Source of the DNA: Andalucia godoyi And28
Lineage: Eukaryota > Protista > Jakobida
Reading direction: 5' to 3'
DNA: 8,986 nt
Assembly: GCA_009859145.1 (NCBI GenBank)
Contig: VRVR01000021.1
Location: 329,480-338,465, forward strand
Shown piece after piece: positions 1 to 8,986 of the stretch. The stretch's first letter is position 1. Every line of letters starts with the position of its first letter. The position numbers and the translations under genes were made by a program. A model generated the notes under the pieces. It was given only the letters and a program-made list of their open reading frames with translations, did not search any database and was not told where the DNA came from.

Positions 1-13
1 GAAAGAAAGAAAA

Positions 14-35
14 GACAGACAGACAGACAGACAGA

Positions 36-74
<39 letters not shown>

Positions 75-80
75 GGAGAG
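14..80. repeat. Compound microsatellite (GACA)6-(CA)8-(GA)10 followed by an A/G-rich tract
   Basis: Read directly: GACA x6 at 14-37, CA x8 at 38-53, GA x10 at 54-73. Confidence 0.97.
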
Positions 81-194
81 AAAAGAAAAAGAAAAATGAA
101 AAATGAAAGAAACGAAGGAACATGATTGGATTGCGACAACGTGTGATGGTGGAGAGACGGCGAGAAGGAAGTGAACGACGACAACAACATGTAA

Positions 195-391: not shown

Positions 392-1189
392 TTACAAGTC
401 CTGGATGCCGAGTTCTTTGCGGATGGTCTGCGCCTGTTTCCAGAGCGACGCTTCCCCGGCGTCCGTGTTTTCCCTGTGCTTGATGGCGAGTTTCCAGTAC
501 TCCTCTGCACTCTTCATAAAGTACTCCTGTTCGGTCTCCTTGGTGGCTCGCAGTCTCCTTGCAGGAACTCCACCCCACACTTCTCCTTCCTTGACCACGA
601 CTCCAGCGCCTACAACGGCGCCTGCCGCGACAATCGAGCGTGGCTCCACGACAGAGCCAGGCATCAAAACGGCCCCCATTCCAATCAACGACTCATCGCC
701 AACCTTGGTCGAGTGCAGCTGCGCTCCATGGCCAATGGTCACAAACGATCCAATGACAGTCGCCCCAGTCACAATCGCTCCATCTTGCACATTCGAGCCG
801 TATCCAACATGCAGCACAGACGCTCCATCCACAGCCGCCGATGTGCTAGAAGCCGCCGATGAATTGGAAGGAGAAGAGGAAGAAGACGAAGCGGTGGAAG
901 ACGGTTCGGAGCGAACAATAGCATCCGGCCACACCGACACCCGATCGGCAATCTGCACGTGGCCCGCAACCAGCGCTGATTCAGCAATATAAGATTCGGC
1001 AGACACGCTTGGGGCAGCTGAGCCAAGCCGCAGAATGGAGCGATGCGAAGAATAAGGTTCATAGAAACCGCGGAAGAGCGATCGCAGTGCTTGCAAAGGC
1101 GAGGAAGGCGCCGCGGGGCCTGAAGCACCCAGTGACGGGGTAACACCGGTTGACGAATACCGGACGAGACGCAATGCAGAACGCTTCAT
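392..1189 (-). CDS. Mitochondrial gamma carbonic anhydrase / CA-like protein (hexapeptide-repeat left-handed beta-helix), probable accessory subunit of respiratory complex I; 265 aa
   Basis: Hexapeptide repeats and family motifs SVW..A.VR, GSNVQD, VTIGH.A.LH, IGMGAVL and GEVWGG.PAR, plus a C-terminal helix. The N-terminus MKRSALRLVRYSS is Arg-rich and acid-free like a mitochondrial presequence. The track start at 1225 is GTG; the first ATG is at 1189. Confidence 0.92.
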   Translation of the reverse strand: MKRSALRLVRYSSTGVTPSLGASGPAAPSSPLQALRSLFRGFYEPYSSHRSILRLGSAAPSVSAESYIAESALVAGHVQIADRVSVWPDAIVRSEPSSTASSSSSSPSNSSAASSTSAAVDGASVLHVGYGSNVQDGAIVTGATVIGSFVTIGHGAQLHSTKVGDESLIGMGAVLMPGSVVEPRSIVAAGAVVGAGVVVKEGEVWGGVPARRLRATKETEQEYFMKSAEEYWKLAIKHRENTDAGEASLWKQAQTIRKELGIQDL

Positions 1190-1209
1190 GGGAGAAAAAT
1201 ACGAAACTT

Positions 1210-1232
1210 CACACACCTCACACACCTCACAC
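1210..1232. repeat. Tandem 9-mer (CACACACCT) x2.5 in a CA-rich stretch
   Basis: Units at 1210-1218 and 1219-1227, partial unit at 1228-1232. Confidence 0.85.
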
Positions 1233-2163: not shown

Positions 2164-5100
2164 TCAGGTTGAAATGGACAGGGTGGATACTGCTTCTGTG
2201 GGCACTAAACCGAGAGAAACCAAGGACGAAGGCTGCACTTTGACATGAGCATGCGCGGAGGCAGGAAAAGCAGACAAGCTGGAGTGTCCCGTTGGATGGT
2301 GGTGACTCGCATGGTGGACCTTCCGAGCCACTTCCAGGGACGTGGAGATCGGACGCAGCATCGCACGCGGAGCCACAACGTCGCCAGAACATAGAGGGAT
2401 TGCAGAAAATTGGAATGAAAAGGGCGTTGTCGCGGCCCACTCCACCATCGTCACAGTATTTCCAACAAGCAGCCATGTGGAGTCTTCCGCAAACAACTCG
2501 ATCACGCTTGGCACAGCACGGTCAGTCGACAAATCGGAGGCGATTAGATCGCACGCGACTTCGAACGTCACGAGGTCCGCATATCGAATGTTCGAAGAAA
2601 GGCATGTCACCGTCAGGAAACAAGAGGTAGTCGCAGTGGTCGACGTCGCCGTCCGCGGACACTCCGACATGTCCGGGTCCATGGGAATATCCAGAACAGA
2701 AGGGACAGACAGACTGGACGGTTGACATCCGCCATCCGTGAAATGCAGCCGCATACTGATCGAGCGCTCTGTGAACGGCAAGAGCGCTTCCACCGTCTTT
2801 GCATCCACGAGCAAGATCTCAAAAAGTGTTTCCGAAGGGCGAACGGCAGCAGGGCCCGCATTGCAGATGCTCGTGGAAATCTCAGAGACTTGCAGACCGG
2901 TCGCAGTGTCGTGGACCAGACATTCACATTTGGAAACGCAAAACACGCTGTCCGAATCATTGATGATGGAGCATTGCAGGAGATTGGCATCACCGTCGGA
3001 GGCGTGCGAAACAATAAACCGTCCTCGCGCGCGGAATGGAGACCGAAACGAAAGAGAAAACTCCTGGGAGGTGGAAAACCGCTGTCCACTGGACGATCGG
3101 TAGTCCACCTGAACAGAAACGGAGTGCAGCACCGTGGAAGGAACCGCACACGATTGAACGACCAGCGGGTACAAAAGCGAGGATGGAGGATCCGAGGGAA
3201 GCTTGGTGAAGGACTTTTGCCAGGAGTCGGTCGATAATTTCTCCGCGACATCCAGTGCGTCTGAACAAAACTGCAGTCCTGTCGAAGAAGTCACTGAGAT
3301 GCGTCCTTCGACGACATCATCCAACATGCCGTGAAGACGCAGTTGGATTTCTTGAGGCCAATTCGGCACCAGACACGACGGATGATCCAAAGAAGCAGAC
3401 ACCGTAAGCGGAGACTGCTTTACAGGAATGTCCAGAGCAGCGCCTGCTAGGCTTGTCCAGTTGTAGATCCCGAAATCATCCAAGAAAAAAACGAGGCGAT
3501 CTGTTTCATACCAGCCAAGCGGACAGCAGAGCAAGGCAAATTGCAATTCACATTTGCAAAAAGGATGCAACGTGACTGACTCGTGATGAAATTCGACAAC
3601 TTCGTCAAATGGATCTGCATTCTTTGGTGAGAAAGGGGAGGAACCGGGATCCAACACTCGGCGCCGCACAGAGCGTTGGTTGAGAGGTGATCGTGTGCAA
3701 GACAGCGTGACGGAGGACACGGAAACCGGCATCGGGAAATGAGATGTAATCGAGACAGTGACGACAGGAGAGTGCGGAGACTTTGCCAAGGAACTGGATA
3801 CCTTTGCAGTCACAAAAATCACATTGCGAAGGGATACGGCAAGCATTCCCGCAGCAGACGGATTTATCGATGCATTCTGCAACCGGGGTTTCTGCTGAGA
3901 CCGATACGAGTCCAAGATAGCAAGAGCTTTCAAGAACAGCTGCTTCCGAACATCCTCACTCCAACTTTCCAAAGCACACATTTCGAGAAGAGATATCAGA
4001 CACTCATCCAGATGGCCCAGTTTTTCCTGGCAGTACGCAAGCAATGGCAAGCATCGGGCTAGTAGATCAACCCAGCTGTCGGACCGCAGCAAGAATGATT
4101 CCTGCTTAAGGATCAGGTACGATTCATCAAAGTCAGATCGACACATGCGCACATACGCCAGATCGTCGTTCACTTCAGCAACCCATCGCGGTCGTGCTCG
4201 GATTTGAAAAGCTGTGATAATCTGTGCGCTCGTGGACATCAGCAGAGTATCAAATGCTTGCACAGAGAGCAGTGCATTGAACAAGTCACGATATCGTATC
4301 TCCGCAATGTCTCCGTCGGTAATCGACAAATCGGGGTCTCGATACTGATGAAATCGGTCACAGGAAACAATGTCAAACAAGGACAGCTCCGGAAGGAAGC
4401 CACGTGCAGCTCCCAGACGAAGAAGCTCCGTTCGAGACAAGTTTAGAATTTCAGTTGCCGCATCAAAGAGGGGGTGCCCTTCCGGCAGACCGCGTCCCTC
4501 AATCCACACACGAATGATCTCTGCAAGTGATGAAAACGCACAAAATCCCCATACGTGCGATCGAAGTAACATCTGCGGATCATCATGCCAGGCCGCGAGA
4601 TAGTACCTAATGAACTTCTTTCCTGTGTTGGCAGCCTCCAGCCAATCCAGAGAAAAGTTGAGCACTGCGATCTGCCTTGAGACGATGTACTCATGAACTT
4701 CAAACGCCGTGATCTCCCTTGATTCAATCATGTCACGATACGGCTTTTGGAGAACATCAAAGATGCGGGTCGATATGCTCTCCAAACTCAGCTGGGACGG
4801 GGACTTGAATATGGATTTGTGCGTCTCCACAAACTTGAACAAGTCCGCATACATCTTGTTTGCGTGGACAAAGAGGCGAAACTGGGTGTACGAAATCGCG
4901 AGTGCGTCGACCACTAAAATGTATCGAAACACATCTATACCACCTCCCACAGTGTTGCTGGAGACAAGCGATTTGGTAGCTTCGATCTCCAGTGACTGGA
5001 TGCGCTCCGCAAAAGACTGTGCAAGACTGGAGCGCATGACGGCGATCAACGACGGGATGTCATCGAGTCTGGAGATTTTCGTTCCCACGGGCAAATCGGC

Positions 5101-5514
5101 TTTCAGCTTGTCAAAGATCTTCCTCTGATCCTTCTCCTTTTCCTTGTCATCAATCTCTGGCACAAACACAAAGATATGACTCCGTTGAGCGACCTTCAGT
5201 GCTTCTGCAAGGTCGGTCAGCCTCTTTCGAACGCCGCCGTCCTTGTACGCCTTTGAATTGGGGCACTTGAATAGCACAGCATACACGTATGGATCATTCC
5301 ACGGAGACACAGAGCCATATGCAGAGTTGGAAGGAAGAGGGAGAGTCTTTGAAACCGTGTACTCGATGGACACCGACGAGCGTTCCGCAATTTTCGAAGA
5401 ATCGACAAACTGTATGTCATCTAGATGCGGCACATTTTCAAGAAACACCGGTCGAACATCGTTCCACTGAACGTTCTCAGGAAATATCCGGACGGTTGCA
5501 CGCGAAGTGTCCAT
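2164..5514 (-). CDS. TRAPPC10: Trafficking protein particle complex II subunit 10 (Trs130), 1116 aa
   Basis: Motifs match plant/animal TRS130 as I recall it: PYVYAVLFKC, RKIFDKLKADL, FRYILVVDALA..Y, FEVHEYIVSRQ..L, SWVDLLARCLP.LA.CQ.KLG and C-terminal WLLVG...IPL.SG.V..P. Length is typical and the ORF is uninterrupted. Confidence 0.9.
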   Translation of the reverse strand: MDTSRATVRIFPENVQWNDVRPVFLENVPHLDDIQFVDSSKIAERSSVSIEYTVSKTLPLPSNSAYGSVSPWNDPYVYAVLFKCPNSKAYKDGGVRKRLTDLAEALKVAQRSHIFVFVPEIDDKEKEKDQRKIFDKLKADLPVGTKISRLDDIPSLIAVMRSSLAQSFAERIQSLEIEATKSLVSSNTVGGGIDVFRYILVVDALAISYTQFRLFVHANKMYADLFKFVETHKSIFKSPSQLSLESISTRIFDVLQKPYRDMIESREITAFEVHEYIVSRQIAVLNFSLDWLEAANTGKKFIRYYLAAWHDDPQMLLRSHVWGFCAFSSLAEIIRVWIEGRGLPEGHPLFDAATEILNLSRTELLRLGAARGFLPELSLFDIVSCDRFHQYRDPDLSITDGDIAEIRYRDLFNALLSVQAFDTLLMSTSAQIITAFQIRARPRWVAEVNDDLAYVRMCRSDFDESYLILKQESFLLRSDSWVDLLARCLPLLAYCQEKLGHLDECLISLLEMCALESWSEDVRKQLFLKALAILDSYRSQQKPRLQNASINPSAAGMLAVSLRNVIFVTAKVSSSLAKSPHSPVVTVSITSHFPMPVSVSSVTLSCTRSPLNQRSVRRRVLDPGSSPFSPKNADPFDEVVEFHHESVTLHPFCKCELQFALLCCPLGWYETDRLVFFLDDFGIYNWTSLAGAALDIPVKQSPLTVSASLDHPSCLVPNWPQEIQLRLHGMLDDVVEGRISVTSSTGLQFCSDALDVAEKLSTDSWQKSFTKLPSDPPSSLLYPLVVQSCAVPSTVLHSVSVQVDYRSSSGQRFSTSQEFSLSFRSPFRARGRFIVSHASDGDANLLQCSIINDSDSVFCVSKCECLVHDTATGLQVSEISTSICNAGPAAVRPSETLFEILLVDAKTVEALLPFTERSISMRLHFTDGGCQPSSLSVPSVLDIPMDPDMSECPRTATSTTATTSCFLTVTCLSSNIRYADLVTFEVACDLIASDLSTDRAVPSVIELFAEDSTWLLVGNTVTMVEWAATTPFSFQFSAIPLCSGDVVAPRAMLRPISTSLEVARKVHHASHHHPTGHSSLSAFPASAHAHVKVQPSSLVSLGLVPTEAVSTLSIST

Positions 5515-5558: not shown

Positions 5559-5633
5559 ACGAAGAAGATGCAGAAGACGAAGAAGAAGGAAGGAAAATAA
5601 AAAGAAAAAAGAAAAAAGAAAAAGAAAAAGAAG
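5559..5633 (-). other. About 75-nt polypyrimidine tract (on -) upstream of TRAPPC10, ending in TCGTCAG
   Basis: A/G-rich run on +. The CAG (- strand 5558-5556) lies 41 nt before the ATG. Confidence 0.8.
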
Positions 5634-5896: not shown

Positions 5897-8563
5897 TTAC
5901 TGCACTTGAGAAAGCAAGTCTGCGATGTCGTGCTTTGCAAGAGATCGCGCATAGTCGAGCGGACTGTGGCCGAAAACATCCACTTGAAGCGGAGACACGC
6001 CTGCTTGCAACAACACCTGAACAGCATCCGTATTTCCAGCAGCAACCGCAAGATGCAGAGGGGATCTTCGTTGAAAATCAAGGATGCTGGACGACACGAT
6101 ACCAGTTGAGAAGAACGACGACAGCACCGTTGCGTCCCCGTCCACAGCGTGTCGACAGACAGTCCACAGCCTTGCATAGGTCTTCACAACAGCTGCGCCA
6201 GAATATTCCCTCAGCGGGACATTCGCGGAATGCAGCTTCCACGTCGGGCGCAAAGAGTTCATTTCCCGGAGGAAAAAATGAGCAACCTCGCAATTCCGGT
6301 TTTCCAACGCAATCTGGAGCGGCAGCATTCCAAGGCAGTCGGCAAGAAAGGGATCCGCATTTCGTTGCACTAGAAAATGTGCTGCATGAACGGAATTATG
6401 TGCGGCTGCCACGTGAAGAAGAGTTCTCTCTCCGTTGAAACAGCGGCAACAAAACAGTTCAGAGCTAGAAATTGTGACCGATAGTTCACGCAATCGATCG
6501 ACATCGTCAGCGGCAACTGCATTTGTAACGGATACTACTTCTAGCCCAACGGAAGGGCAAAAGGGCGACACACTGCACGTATCGCTACTTCCATACCGCA
6601 TCGGTGCAGATATCCTTTTCAAGTCCTGCTGAGCTCCTGCTGAGCGGTGGAGCGTTTCAAGAAACTCGACGACACGCTGATGACCATGCGACTCCGCAAA
6701 GGACAGAGCGTCTTGGGAAAACGAGTCCGTCACGCTGATTCGCGCACCGCAATCCTCCACGAGATACCGAACAACTTCTAAATGACCTGCTGTTACCGCA
6801 ACACCAAGGCACGTTCGACCAGCATAGTCGGCTGCGTCCACAAGGCACCCAGCGTCCACAAACAGTTGGAGAGTATTCAGATCCCCTTCAGCTGTTGCAC
6901 AACACATGAGGAACGCGAGGTCCACATCCCGATATTCCGATCGCAGAGACCATTGTCTCGCTGAAAAGCGTGCTGCGATACCTGGCTTTTGGAGAAGCAC
7001 AGCATAGAGCAGCGGCGTGAAGCCTGCAGCGTCGTATGACACGCCGTTCACCATGCTCGAGGCACGCATGAGAAGATCTACCGACTCACTGGATGTTCCC
7101 AGTGCAGCAGCATGGAGAGCGGACTGAAAAAACGCTCCCGCTTTGCAGACATTCAACTGCAGGTCAATAAGATATGCTAGCGATGCTGGCTCGTTGAACA
7201 TCAGAAAATGAGCAGCAAGCGTCGGCACAAGGTGGTCCTCTACCTTCTTCACAGTCGCTAGCGTCAATCGCTTCCCCAAACTGACAACGGAATCAAATTC
7301 GAGAGGAAGCAGGCGGAACACCGACTGCGAGCGGTGATAGCGGTCCAACACTTCTTCGGGGATACTGGCGGCAGCAAGCTCCACAGTAGCAACATCCTGG
7401 AGCGATTGACAGCTCAGCGCAACAACCCAGCAAATGGCAGTAAACGGAAATGTTAACGTCGGGAGTCCGAAGGGCAGAAGAAACGAGCCAACAGCCCCAT
7501 GAACAATGGTGGTCGCAAGAACTGCAAACACCCACAGGCCAAAAAATTTGCGGCCACGAGCAACAAGAAACAACCCTCCGAGTGCGATGCCAGATAAACA
7601 CGGATTATATCCCCACAACCCCATGTAAATGGATTTTGCGGGAATCCCGAGTGCCATTGCAAACAGTACGCCAAAGACGGATCCGATCAAACATGAAAAT
7701 GCCATAATCCGCGAAGCCACTGCCAAACCGAGCAGACAAATCGCTCCGGAAATTGGATTCTCCAAAAAGAAAACTTGTGAGATGGAGGTAAGGAATGAGC
7801 GGAAGATTTCAGAAACCGAGTAGGAAACGGGCGAAATGTCACTGGGAAATGCAAGGGGATTGGACTTCAGAGAAGGGCTGAGCACGCCGCCGTTCACAAA
7901 AAAGTACAGGGATGACTGCGATGCGAGCAACCAAGACCATGTGGCGAGATGAAACGGAAACGTAAAAGTTGGAATGCCGAGCTGCTTTCCGCAAACGGAG
8001 CCGATGAATACAGAGAACAGGACAGAGAGCGAGCTCATGAGGACCATGAAAATGAGCATATATGGCATAGGAAACGGAGACGAGGGGCCTCCAAACGTGA
8101 AGTACCCCATGGCCATCGCAGTCAGGCATCCTGCGTACCCCATCAGCCCACCTTGCACTGCCACACGATCGACGCCGAAAAGGATGGAAAATCCCGTCGC
8201 GGAAACCGTTCCGATGAGGCAGCAGACACCAAGATACCAATTGTCCACGAAGATTGCGATGAGAAACATGACTGCTGTCAATGGGTTATTTGCGAAAAAC
8301 ACCTGGCTGATCCCTCTCAAAGTCGCATCCACAAAACTGCAGAAGTCGCGGTGCACCAGCATTTCTTGAAGGGCTTTTGCTTCTCCGAGAAGATCCTTCC
8401 ATCGAGCCCCAGACGGAGATGCACTGGATTGGGGGCTCTGCCGTCGACCGTCCTTCATGGCAAGATGCAGCGGTCGGTCATTCTGCAGCGGCATAACCGC
8501 GGTCGACGCCACACTCGTCTGCGATATACTTCGATCCGACCATCCGTGTTTTCTATTCAGCAT
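5897..8563 (-). CDS. Urea transporter (UT/SLC14 family channel) fused to a C-terminal ankyrin-repeat region; 888 aa from the first ATG
   Basis: Both UT half-repeats are present: LRGISQVFFANNP / GLMGY / LGIPTFTFPF and SISQVFFLENP / GLWGYN / GLPTLTFPF. A C-terminal PEE motif follows, as in animal UTs (UT domain about nt 7400-8400). Multiple ankyrin repeats follow (SALHAAA, GFTPLLYAV, GRTCLGVAVTAGH, RTLLHVAA, RSPLHLAVAAGN, GHSPLDYA). The track start at 8605 is GTG; first ATG 8563, alternatives 8494 and 8458. Confidence 0.92.
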   Translation of the reverse strand: MLNRKHGWSDRSISQTSVASTAVMPLQNDRPLHLAMKDGRRQSPQSSASPSGARWKDLLGEAKALQEMLVHRDFCSFVDATLRGISQVFFANNPLTAVMFLIAIFVDNWYLGVCCLIGTVSATGFSILFGVDRVAVQGGLMGYAGCLTAMAMGYFTFGGPSSPFPMPYMLIFMVLMSSLSVLFSVFIGSVCGKQLGIPTFTFPFHLATWSWLLASQSSLYFFVNGGVLSPSLKSNPLAFPSDISPVSYSVSEIFRSFLTSISQVFFLENPISGAICLLGLAVASRIMAFSCLIGSVFGVLFAMALGIPAKSIYMGLWGYNPCLSGIALGGLFLVARGRKFFGLWVFAVLATTIVHGAVGSFLLPFGLPTLTFPFTAICWVVALSCQSLQDVATVELAAASIPEEVLDRYHRSQSVFRLLPLEFDSVVSLGKRLTLATVKKVEDHLVPTLAAHFLMFNEPASLAYLIDLQLNVCKAGAFFQSALHAAALGTSSESVDLLMRASSMVNGVSYDAAGFTPLLYAVLLQKPGIAARFSARQWSLRSEYRDVDLAFLMCCATAEGDLNTLQLFVDAGCLVDAADYAGRTCLGVAVTAGHLEVVRYLVEDCGARISVTDSFSQDALSFAESHGHQRVVEFLETLHRSAGAQQDLKRISAPMRYGSSDTCSVSPFCPSVGLEVVSVTNAVAADDVDRLRELSVTISSSELFCCRCFNGERTLLHVAAAHNSVHAAHFLVQRNADPFLADCLGMLPLQIALENRNCEVAHFFLREMNSLRPTWKLHSANVPLREYSGAAVVKTYARLWTVCRHAVDGDATVLSSFFSTGIVSSSILDFQRRSPLHLAVAAGNTDAVQVLLQAGVSPLQVDVFGHSPLDYARSLAKHDIADLLSQVQ

Positions 8564-8614
8564 TTTTGTTCCATTAAAGAAGTATTTAAAAAAGGGAGGC
8601 AACACTCGTTGTGG

Positions 8615-8690
8615 GAAGAAAAAAGAAAGATGGGAGAATTAAAAAAAAAAACAACAACAACAAAACAATCCCCAAATAAAAATAAGAAAC
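8615..8690. repeat. Low-complexity A-rich tract with an A11 run and (CAA)n; T-rich on - strand upstream of the urea channel
   Basis: Read directly. Confidence 0.8.

Positions 8691-8949: not shown

Positions 8950-8954
<5 letters not shown>

Positions 8955-8986
<32 letters not shown>
8955..8986. repeat. (AT)16 microsatellite running off the window end
   Basis: Read directly. Confidence 0.98.

What the first reader, a model, noticed from the sequence alone, without database searches (positions are those of the whole stretch)
5897..8563. Urea channel (UT/SLC14) fused to a large cytosolic ankyrin-repeat tail
Seen: one uninterrupted ORF joins a complete two-repeat UT domain to about 440 aa of ankyrin repeats. 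Established: characterised UTs (mammalian UT-A/UT-B, bacterial UTs such as dvUT) are trimeric channels with short tails and no ankyrin domain. Ankyrin tails are typical of regulated channels such as TRP and plant Shaker K+ channels. Inference: a gated or scaffolded urea/ammonia-type channel whose activity or location is set through the tail, i.e. a possible nitrogen-sensing or regulated osmolyte-transport system. I know of no characterised example but cannot exclude unstudied database entries.
Basis: partly seen in the sequence, partly recalled or inferred. Interest (0 to 1): 0.75.

Follow-up and report, generated by a model that had tools for sequence, protein, structure and literature searches.

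The report
Urea channel with ankyrin-repeat tail
This is a real, single gene of the protist Andalucia godoyi that joins a complete urea-channel domain to twelve ankyrin repeats. The same design is found in many other eukaryotes and was described in a 2026 survey, so it is a new member of a known but functionally untested class.

Summary
On the minus strand, 8563..5897 is one uninterrupted 888-codon ORF. It holds a full-length UT (PF03253) domain at aa 78-383, with both pore signature motifs and both selectivity-filter threonines. About 450 aa of ankyrin repeats follow: 12 repeats in two blocks of six.

The window is Andalucia godoyi (Jakobida) contig VRVR01000021.1, from a compact, intron-poor genome, so the fusion is not an assembly or gene-model artefact.

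The novelty claim does not hold. I found 47 collinear UT-Ank proteins, 32 of them representatives of separate 50%-identity clusters. They include a second A. godoyi paralog, Capsaspora, Chromosphaera, a choanoflagellate, a hemimastigote and bdelloid rotifers. Their UT domains form one clade (NJ bootstrap 90/100). Cagliani et al. 2026 (PMC12998343) already reported UT+ankyrin in rotifers, arthropods and protists and made the same TRP analogy. I found no functional study of any member.

New here:
- The tail is four tandem copies of a 3-repeat module.
- The window copy has a typical UT domain but the most diverged tail of the family.

Most likely function: a passive trimeric urea (perhaps also NH3 and water) channel whose cytosolic tail is a protein-interaction platform. 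Gating is not excluded.

Interest is low to moderate.

The parts
5897..8563 (-). Complete intronless CDS of the UT-ankyrin protein (888 aa plus TAA stop at 5897-5899)
   Evidence: ORF list; sequence of both ends; identical 888-aa protein in the collection
8333..8563 (-). N-terminal cytosolic segment, aa 1-77. Residues 1-53 are predicted disordered and poorly conserved, Ser/Arg-rich, with an RRQS motif
   Evidence: AF2 pLDDT below 50 for 1-53; mean conservation 0.31
7415..8332 (-). UT (SLC14-type) channel domain, aa 78-383, made of two homologous halves
   Evidence: PF03253 E 2e-74; PDB UT-A/UT-B/dvUT hits 1e-36 to 1e-63; model superposes on human UT-B with TM 0.94, rmsd 1.9 A; internal repeat seen as HSP 240-387 against the first half of the paralog
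7952..7978 (-). First pore signature motif GIPTFTFPF (aa 196-204), with Sm-site Thr201
   Evidence: Alignment; aligns with 'LPVFTLPF' of human UT-A1; role of the Thr in PMC12171576
7442..7468 (-). Second pore signature motif GLPTLTFPF (aa 366-374), with Sm-site Thr371
7262..7414 (-). Juxtamembrane connector, aa 384-434. It holds the family-wide 'IPE(D/E)H..R(Y/F)' motif (aa 401-409) and an amphipathic helix at 402-418
   Evidence: Alignment; near-invariant P402, E403, H405, R408; AF2 helices with pLDDT about 76-86
6632..7261 (-). Ankyrin block 1, aa 435-644: six repeats, i.e. two A-B-C triplets
   Evidence: Pfam Ank_2/Ank_4; AF2 helix pairs; period-3 repeat similarity
6557..6631 (-). Disordered, unconserved linker between the two ankyrin blocks, aa 645-669
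   Evidence: pLDDT below 50 for 644-670; conservation 0.24
5900..6556 (-). Ankyrin block 2, aa 670-888: six repeats, i.e. two A-B-C triplets, with a disordered loop at 773-789
   Evidence: Pfam Ank/Ank_3/Ank_5 at 829-872; AF2

Best explanation
This is a genuine single-exon nuclear gene of the jakobid flagellate Andalucia godoyi. It belongs to an old, eukaryote-wide subfamily of urea-transporter (UT/SLC14-type) channels that carry a C-terminal tail of twelve ankyrin repeats. Shown: the UT domain is complete, keeps both LPxxTxPF pore motifs and both selectivity-filter threonines, and models onto UT-B at TM 0.94. Shown: the tail is collinear in relatives from Discoba, Holozoa and Hemimastigophora. 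Inferred: like solved UTs, the protein forms a homotrimer of independent, passive pores for urea, and possibly for NH3 and water. Inferred: the three cytosolic tails hang below the membrane as protein-interaction platforms that place or regulate the channel by partner binding or anchoring, rather than supplying energy or a new substrate path. Inferred: because the named carriers are heterotrophs, the likely physiological role is controlled release or equilibration of urea as waste or osmolyte. Shown: the window copy is the derived one of two A. godoyi paralogs, with a UT domain of average conservation and the least conserved tail in the family.
For: Of 80 positions identical in dvUT and both halves of human UT-A1, 51 are kept, including all motif residues except a W-to-F change. 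The fold match is TM 0.94, on a model with mean pLDDT 77 and pTM 0.67. All 47 collinear proteins hit both UT and Ank Pfam families, and their tails are 460-610 aa long with 0.8-1.0 occupancy of both blocks. Genomic neighbours of three metagenomic relatives are eukaryotic. The UT domains of UT-Ank proteins form one bipartition against 37 other UT domains (NJ bootstrap 90/100). Identity is 44-50% to UT-Ank members but 33% or less to any stand-alone UT in the sampled set. The architecture is already published. Tail divergence of the window copy: 47 of 81 conserved columns kept, the lowest of 45 members, against 83 of 99 in the UT domain.
Against: There is no functional, expression or localisation data for any UT-Ank protein. 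Trimer formation, substrate and tail function are inferred only from homology. The NJ trees are simple distance trees with limited outgroup sampling. An earlier run with 9 outgroups gave only 123/200 for UT-Ank monophyly. Whether A. godoyi makes or uses urea could not be checked. The weak conservation of the window copy's tail could mean that this particular tail is losing its ancestral role.
Confidence: 0.6

Rival explanations
1. Directly gated channel. The ankyrin tail, rigidly coupled through the conserved juxtamembrane helix, opens or plugs the cytosolic mouth of the pore in response to force, osmotic swelling, a ligand or phosphorylation, in the manner of TRP/NOMPC channels. This would be the first gated UT.
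For: The connector between the last TM helix and the first ankyrin repeat is conserved family-wide (P402, E403, H405, R408). It is modelled with fair confidence, including a small beta bridge between 392-394 and 432-433. Tail length and repeat number are held constant across very distant lineages, as expected if geometry matters.
Against: No UT is known to be gated by a domain of its own. The model has a low-confidence break at 424-427 and a disordered linker at 644-670, and no inter-domain contact data were available. The PE..R motif also occurs in UT-EF-hand and UT-M23 proteins and the PE in dvUT, so it may simply be the end of the UT fold. In the window copy the conserved hairpin residues of the tail are largely lost.
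Confidence: 0.15
2. Transceptor or sensor. The UT domain mainly senses urea or ammonia, and the ankyrin tail relays the signal to partners, with transport being secondary.
For: Fusions of UT with other signalling-type modules exist, such as EF-hands (PMC12998343). Two paralogs in one small genome allow specialisation.
Against: The pore is fully conserved, which is what a working channel needs and a pure sensor does not. UT channels show no known conformational cycle that could report occupancy (established knowledge of dvUT and UT-B structures). The named carriers are phagotrophic or osmotrophic heterotrophs for which urea is not an obvious nutrient signal (my knowledge of these taxa).
Confidence: 0.07
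3. Artefact. Two neighbouring genes (a UT and an ankyrin protein) were merged by mis-assembly or read-through annotation, or the sequence is bacterial contamination.
For: None found. The only initial ground was that the architecture is unusual among characterised UTs.
Against: The frame is continuous with no stop for 888 codons. The junction region itself is conserved in 47 proteins from independent genomes and transcriptomes. The gene sits on a 361-kb A. godoyi contig between eukaryotic genes, including a TRAPPC10-like gene. The genome is intron-poor and its gene models were checked against RNA-seq by its authors.
Confidence: 0.02
4. Decaying tail. After duplication the window copy kept the channel but is losing the ancestral tail function, so the ankyrin region is now only a folded spacer or stability element.
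For: The tail keeps only 58% of family-conserved columns, the lowest of 45 members. The paralog ANDGO_06711 keeps 86%, and the window's UT domain is at the family median. The DYDGRT and DRWG hairpin motifs are mostly replaced.
Against: All 12 repeats are still intact and in frame, and are modelled at pLDDT 80-90. No repeat has been deleted, which argues for continued selection on the fold.
Confidence: 0.16

Closest known systems
UT-ankyrin fusion proteins reported by Cagliani et al. 2026 (Biol Direct 21:32, PMC12998343; example UniProt A0A814UYH3, a rotifer protein)
   Same: Same order of domains (UT, then C-terminal ankyrin repeats). They are collinear over 91-99% of the window protein at 27-30% identity. 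The same clade of UT domains. The paper proposes the same TRP-like regulation idea.
   Different: The window protein comes from a jakobid (Discoba). Its UT domain is only 42-45% identical to rotifer members, and its tail is the most diverged of the family. The paper gives no repeat anatomy, phylogeny of the fusion class or experiments.
ANDGO_06711 (P0002), the second UT-Ank gene of Andalucia godoyi
   Same: Same genome and same architecture. It is 35% identical over 842 aa, and 50-51% identical in the UT domain.
   Different: The two are not exclusive sisters in the NJ tree (19/200). ANDGO_06711 keeps 86% of family-conserved tail residues against 58% for the window copy.
Capsaspora owczarzaki CAOG_00074 (XP_004364945.2), Chromosphaera perkinsii, Diaphanoeca grandis and Spironema sp. 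BW2 UT-Ank proteins
   Same: UT plus a collinear two-block ankyrin tail.
   Different: They have longer N-terminal extensions (498 aa in Capsaspora, 288 aa in Chromosphaera). They are only 23-27% identical to the window in the tail and fall in a different sub-clade.
Characterised UT channels: Desulfovibrio vulgaris dvUT (3K3F), bovine and human UT-B (4EZC, 6QD5), human UT-A (8BLO, 8XD7)
   Same: Same fold (TM 0.91-0.94). Same two signature motifs and Sm threonines. Presumably the same trimeric passive-pore mechanism.
   Different: They are 26-30% identical. They have no ankyrin tail and only short termini. UT-A1 is instead a tandem of two UT domains.
Other UT fusions: UT-EF-hand (for example Microcoleus, Enhygromyxa; P0023, P0366, P0401) and UT-M23 peptidase (P0028, P0029, P0032)
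   Same: A C-terminal accessory domain after the same 'PE..R' end of the UT domain.
   Different: Different accessory domains, mostly bacterial, and outside the UT-Ank clade.
Ankyrin-bearing channels: TRPA/TRPV/NOMPC and plant Shaker K+ channels (AKT1, GORK)
   Same: A membrane pore with a cytosolic ankyrin domain. Plant Shaker ankyrin domains are also C-terminal, and GORK gives a hit (E 5e-14) to the last triplet of the window tail.
   Different: The pore folds are unrelated and tetrameric rather than trimeric, and TRP ankyrin domains are N-terminal. The similarity is at the level of generic ankyrin repeats, so this is an analogy and not membership.

Membership tests
Urea transporter family (UT / SLC14; Pfam PF03253) | Full-length match to the UT profile above the curated threshold | tested here: met
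   250.9 bits against a cut-off of 25, profile positions 1-289 of 292
Urea transporter family (UT / SLC14; Pfam PF03253) | Two homologous halves (internal duplication), each with five TM helices and a pore helix | tested here: met
   aa 240-387 align to the first half of the paralog (E 5e-11). Helix sets in the AF2 model are symmetric, at 73-217 and 250-387
Urea transporter family (UT / SLC14; Pfam PF03253) | LPxxTxPF-type signature in each half, carrying the Sm-site threonines (bovine UT-B T172 and T334) | tested here: met
   GIPTFT201FPF and GLPTLT371FPF. They align to FTLPF and CTWPF of human UT-A1. The role of the threonines is described in PMC12171576
Urea transporter family (UT / SLC14; Pfam PF03253) | UT three-dimensional fold | tested here: met
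   The predicted model against human UT-B 8xdf gives TMt 0.94 and rmsd 1.9 A, and against dvUT 0.93. This uses a predicted structure, not a solved one
Urea transporter family (UT / SLC14; Pfam PF03253) | Homotrimeric assembly | not testable with these tools
   Only monomer prediction was available
Urea transporter family (UT / SLC14; Pfam PF03253) | Passive, phloretin-sensitive urea permeation | not testable with these tools
   Needs a flux assay
Ankyrin repeat proteins (Pfam Ank clan) | Tandem 33-residue helix-turn-helix repeats matching the Ank profiles | tested here: met
   Ank_2 107 bits, Ank 76, Ank_3 73, Ank_4 72 and Ank_5 61, all above their cut-offs. The AF2 model has 12 helix pairs
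UT-ankyrin fusion subfamily (architecture reported in PMC12998343) | UT domain followed by C-terminal ankyrin repeats in one polypeptide | tested here: met
   All 47 aligned relatives share it
UT-ankyrin fusion subfamily (architecture reported in PMC12998343) | UT domain groups with those of other UT-Ank proteins rather than with stand-alone UTs | tested here: met
   NJ bipartition 90/100 with 37 outgroups, but 123/200 with 9 outgroups. Identity is 44-50% to UT-Ank members against 33% or less to the stand-alone UTs sampled
UT-ankyrin fusion subfamily (architecture reported in PMC12998343) | Collinear tail of two six-repeat blocks (four A-B-C triplets) | tested here: met
   Occupancy of the window's block columns is 0.8-1.0 in nearly all full-length members. 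Period-3 similarity is shown
UT-ankyrin fusion subfamily (architecture reported in PMC12998343) | Family-conserved tail residues, including the DYDGRT and DRWG hairpin motifs. This is a conserved feature I observed, not a published defining one | tested here: inconclusive
   Only 47 of 81 conserved columns are kept, the lowest of 45 members. The motifs are mostly substituted
TRP / NOMPC ankyrin-bearing cation channels | Six-TM tetrameric cation-channel core with an N-terminal ankyrin domain | tested here: not met
   The only membrane domain is UT, and the ankyrin region is C-terminal. This is a functional analogy only
Plant Shaker K+ channels with a C-terminal ankyrin domain (AKT1/GORK) | Voltage-gated K+ channel core plus a cyclic-nucleotide-binding-like domain before the ankyrin domain | tested here: not met
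   No such Pfam domains were found. There is only generic ankyrin similarity to GORK

The most novel reading that the evidence does not exclude
UT-Ank proteins are an ancient class of regulated urea/ammonia channels. Their twelve-repeat, four-triplet ankyrin tail, rigidly joined to the last pore helix by the conserved PE(D/E)H..R connector, gates the pore or couples it to the cytoskeleton or osmotic state. The two A. godoyi paralogs would then have split this role, one keeping the ancestral partner surface and the window copy acquiring a new one. This would be the first UT channel with built-in gating and a tractable model for how passive solute pores acquire regulation.
Probability: 0.15. Interest if true: 0.65.

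Novelty: new member of a known kind. Interest (0 to 1): 0.3.

Why it matters
UT channels are textbook constitutive pores, regulated in mammals only by trafficking and phosphorylation. A whole eukaryote-wide subfamily with a large, length-conserved ankyrin tail suggests a mode of regulation or anchoring that nobody has tested. Because members exist in tractable organisms such as Capsaspora, and the protein should express in oocytes or yeast, the question is directly testable. For this particular window, however, the architecture is neither unique nor unreported. Its main value is as a diverged paralog that could help separate channel function from tail function.

Tried and rejected
- **Kinetoplastid origin.** My first guess, from same-strand genes and T-rich spacers, was rejected. 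The gamma-carbonic-anhydrase-like neighbour has no close kinetoplastid relatives, and its contig is A. godoyi VRVR01000021.1.
- **Exact look-up of the UT-Ank protein on contigs.** It found nothing. The neighbour gene had to be used instead.
- **Supplements.** Those of PMC12998343 are not held, so its Table S3 list of protists could not be checked. The supplements of the A. godoyi genome paper mention no urea, urease, arginase or ankyrin, so the organism's urea metabolism remains unknown.
- **Profile search of 1.84 billion representatives.** It was swamped by giant ankyrin proteins. Only the 32 full-length UT+Ank hits in the top 150 are usable, so the family size is a lower bound.
- **UT-domain-only homolog search.** It returned only stand-alone (mostly bacterial) UTs and UT-EF proteins, and not the UT-Ank family, because of the word-candidate limit. 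It was useful only for outgroups.
- **First tree script.** It timed out and was redone with fast distances.
- **Sister group of the UT-Ank clade.** It is unresolved: vertebrate UT 12/100, UT-EF 0/100.
- **PDB searches with the tail and with a triplet profile.** They are dominated by DARPins and ankyrins and cannot test my remembered resemblance of the A-B-C triplet to glutaminase and AKT1 ankyrin domains. That remains an untested lead.
- **RNA genes and neighbours.** No tRNA or Rfam family lies in the window. Neighbouring genes (TRAPPC10-like, hexapeptide/gamma-CA-like, and six ORFs without Pfam hits) give no functional context.
- **N-terminus docking.** The model gives no support for the N-terminus docking onto the tail, because residues 1-53 have pLDDT below 50.
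Full report
**Observation**

The window holds a single long open frame on the minus strand, 5897..8605. The first ATG is at 8563 and has an A at -3. The frame ends at TAA 5899-5897 and encodes 888 aa.

Pfam finds a full-length urea-transporter domain. PF03253 covers aa 78-383 and profile positions 1-289 of 292 (E 2e-74). Five ankyrin families score above threshold in the C-terminal half. PDB sequence search gives human UT-A1, dvUT, UT-B and zebrafish UT at E 1e-63 to 1e-30 for aa ~57-411, and DARPins, ankyrin-1 and NOMPC for aa ~480-886.

The strand is minus.

**Source organism and gene integrity**

The neighbouring hexapeptide/gamma-carbonic-anhydrase-like gene (392..1225, minus strand) is recorded on NCBI GCA_009859145.1, contig VRVR01000021.1 (361,630 bp). 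The reverse complement of the window is contained in that locus. VRVR00000000 is the Andalucia godoyi nuclear genome. It is about 20 Mb and compact, and 'the vast majority of genes [are] not interrupted by introns' (PMC7050145; taxonomy: Discoba, Jakobida).

The other neighbour (2164..5514, minus strand) is a TRAPPC10-like protein. An identical 888-aa protein is already in the protein collection (P0001).

A fused gene model or mis-assembly is excluded by three points:
- the continuous frame;
- the eukaryotic context;
- above all, conservation of the junction region itself in 46 other proteins (see 'Distribution' below).

**Anatomy**

The AlphaFold2 model was built on a 22-sequence family alignment. 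It has mean pLDDT 77.3 and pTM 0.67.

| Region (aa) | Feature |
|---|---|
| 1-53 | disordered |
| 73-217 and 250-387 | two symmetric helix bundles, separated by a disordered loop at 223-240 that I take to be extracellular |
| 402-418 | juxtamembrane helix |
| 435-644 | six ankyrin helix pairs (block 1) |
| 644-670 | disordered linker |
| 670-887 | six more helix pairs (block 2), with a disordered loop at 773-789 |

The UT part superposes on human UT-B (8xdf) with TM 0.94 and rmsd 1.9 A, and on dvUT with TM 0.93.

Both UT signature motifs are intact: GIPTFT201FPF and GLPTLT371FPF. They align with the FTLPF and CTWPF motifs of human UT-A1. Their threonines are the Sm-site residues whose mutation blocks urea, water and NH3 flux in mammalian UTs (PMC12171576).

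Of 80 positions identical in dvUT and both halves of UT-A1, the window protein keeps 51, and most of the changes are conservative. The second half of the UT domain aligns to the first half of the paralog (E 5e-11), which shows the internal duplication typical of UTs.

UT C-termini are cytoplasmic (established from the dvUT and UT-B structures), so the tail is cytosolic.

**Distribution: the architecture is neither unique nor undescribed**

The first homolog search returned 21 further proteins with UT+Ank. They include ANDGO_06711 of A. godoyi itself (35% identity over 91% of the query, i.e. a paralog), bdelloid rotifer proteins (Rotaria, Adineta) and metagenomic proteins. Contigs carrying three metagenomic members have eukaryotic neighbours, such as F-box/WD40, DSS1, Autophagy_act_C and Nodulin-like genes.

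A profile search of 1.84 billion representatives was swamped by giant ankyrin proteins. Even so, its top 150 contained 32 representatives of 50%-identity clusters that matched across both the UT and ankyrin regions. All 47 proteins assembled hit both UT and Ank Pfam families.

Named members add:
- Capsaspora owczarzaki CAOG_00074;
- Chromosphaera perkinsii;
- the choanoflagellate Diaphanoeca grandis;
- Spironema sp. BW2;
- an MMETSP transcript.

One 'Methanobacteriota archaeon' MAG protein, on a 2.6-kb contig, nests among the Andalucia-like sequences and is probably a misbinned eukaryote.

The literature search found one directly relevant paper, Cagliani et al. 2026 (PMC12998343). [quoted passage not shown] No paper mentions any experiment on such a protein.

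**Evolution**

In neighbour-joining trees of the UT domain, the 46 UT-Ank sequences form one bipartition against 37 other UT domains (dvUT, both halves of human UT-A1, bacterial UTs, UT-EF-hand, UT-M23). Bootstrap support is 90/100. It was 123/200 with only nine outgroups.

The window protein falls in an 'Andalucia-like' clade with ANDGO_06711, four metagenomic proteins and no others (97/100). The two A. godoyi genes are not exclusive sisters (19/200).

The window UT domain is 44-50% identical to its closest UT-Ank members, but 33% or less to any stand-alone UT sampled. The sister group of the clade is unresolved.

The tail is collinear throughout the family. It is 460-610 aa long after the PE motif, and occupancy of both ankyrin blocks is 0.8-1.0 in nearly all full-length members, from Andalucia to Capsaspora, choanoflagellate, hemimastigote and rotifers.

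The simplest reading is a single old fusion, followed by vertical descent and perhaps some horizontal transfer.

**New details found here**

1. The twelve repeats are four tandem copies of a three-repeat module:
   - A: 'LLPxLLCxAAxxGD';
   - B: 'DYDGRTPLHxAAxxGH';
   - C: 'D(R)(W/F)GxTPLxDA'.

   Similarity between family-consensus repeats averages about 40 at offsets 3, 6 and 9, and about 15 at all other offsets.
2. The residues conserved in B and C include hairpin positions that are variable in generic ankyrin repeats (my knowledge of DARPin design). This hints at a constrained surface.
3. The window copy has an ordinary UT domain, keeping 83 of 99 family-conserved columns, which is the family median. 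It keeps only 47 of 81 conserved tail columns, the lowest of 45 members. ANDGO_06711 keeps 86%. The window gene is thus the derived paralog with respect to the tail, although all twelve repeats remain folded in the model (pLDDT 80-90).

**Mechanism**

Shown: the UT pore looks competent, the tail is a cytosolic ankyrin solenoid, and a conserved connector ('IPE(D/E)H..R(Y/F)', aa 401-409) joins them.

Inferred: the protein forms a homotrimer of independent passive pores for urea and possibly NH3 and water, as in solved UTs. The three tails act as protein-binding platforms that localise or regulate the channel.

I rank partner-mediated anchoring or regulation above direct TRP-like gating, for three reasons:
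- no UT is known to gate;
- the model has flexible breaks at 424-427 and 644-670;
- the PE..R motif is shared with UT-EF and UT-M23 fusions and partly with dvUT.

All named carriers are heterotrophs (my knowledge). Controlled release or equilibration of urea therefore seems more likely than nitrogen scavenging or sensing. Whether A. godoyi has urease or arginase could not be checked.

**Comparison and verdict**

Membership in the UT family is met on every sequence and fold criterion that could be tested. Trimerisation and flux are untestable here.

Membership in the UT-Ank subfamily is met on architecture, phylogeny and collinearity, with an unusually diverged tail. TRP and plant Shaker channels are analogies only.

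The finding is a real feature and a new member of a known, published but functionally uncharacterised kind.

Noticed in passing
window 5900-7261 (-), and alignment A2 of 47 relatives: The 12 ankyrin repeats are four tandem copies of a 3-repeat A-B-C module. Consensus-repeat similarity is about 40 at offsets 3, 6 and 9 and about 15 elsewhere. From memory the same triplet pattern occurs in the glutaminase (KGA) C-terminus and in plant AKT1/GORK ankyrin domains. That resemblance was not tested.
   Followed up: partly
window 5900-7261 (-) compared with P0002 (ANDGO_06711): The window copy keeps only 58% of family-conserved tail residues, the lowest of 45 members, while its UT domain is at the family median. 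The paralog keeps 86%. This suggests relaxed or changed selection on this tail after duplication.
   Followed up: yes
window 2164-5514 (-): A 1116-aa ORF with a TRAPPC10 N-terminal domain (PF23036, E 2.7e-11) and a weak Foie-gras_1 hit. It is probably the TRAPPII-specific subunit of A. godoyi.
   Followed up: partly
window 392-1225 (-): A hexapeptide-repeat / gamma-carbonic-anhydrase-like protein (the recorded product is 265 aa, from an internal ATG) with a Ser-rich insertion. Its nearest relatives are only about 35-40% identical over full-length matches (up to 57% over shorter aligned stretches), and those with names are from diatoms and bacteria. It may be a mitochondrial complex I gamma-CA subunit.
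   Followed up: partly
window 13-81, 5583-5632, 8951-8986: There are microsatellites (AGAC)n/(AG)n and (TA)n at the window ends. A purine-rich tract on the plus strand (T/C-rich on the coding strand) lies in the spacer between the UT-Ank and TRAPPC10-like genes, and there is a similar T-rich tract upstream of the UT-Ank start (about 8610-8690). All three genes are on the minus strand.
   Followed up: no
P0011 (Rotaria socialis) and P0021 (metagenome), alignment A1 at window aa 366-374: These rotifer-type paralogs have the second pore motif changed to P(A/P)(L/M)MLPS, which loses the Sm-site threonine. They may be non-conducting UT-Ank copies.
   Followed up: no
P0181 = RYE99210.1 (2,567-bp contig): It is annotated as 'MAG: Methanobacteriota archaeon' but nests inside the Andalucia-like eukaryotic UT-Ank clade next to P0004. 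It is probably a misbinned eukaryotic contig.
   Followed up: partly
P0010 (Adineta ricciae), P0214 (Capsaspora), P0210 (Chromosphaera): Some UT-Ank proteins carry extra N-terminal parts: a PF00756 esterase domain in Adineta (possibly a gene-model fusion), and 498-aa and 288-aa extensions in Capsaspora and Chromosphaera.
   Followed up: no
L001 1-2200 and 11000-20798 (A. godoyi contig flanks outside the window): Six further ORFs of 218-963 aa have no Pfam match at E 0.001 or better.
   Followed up: no
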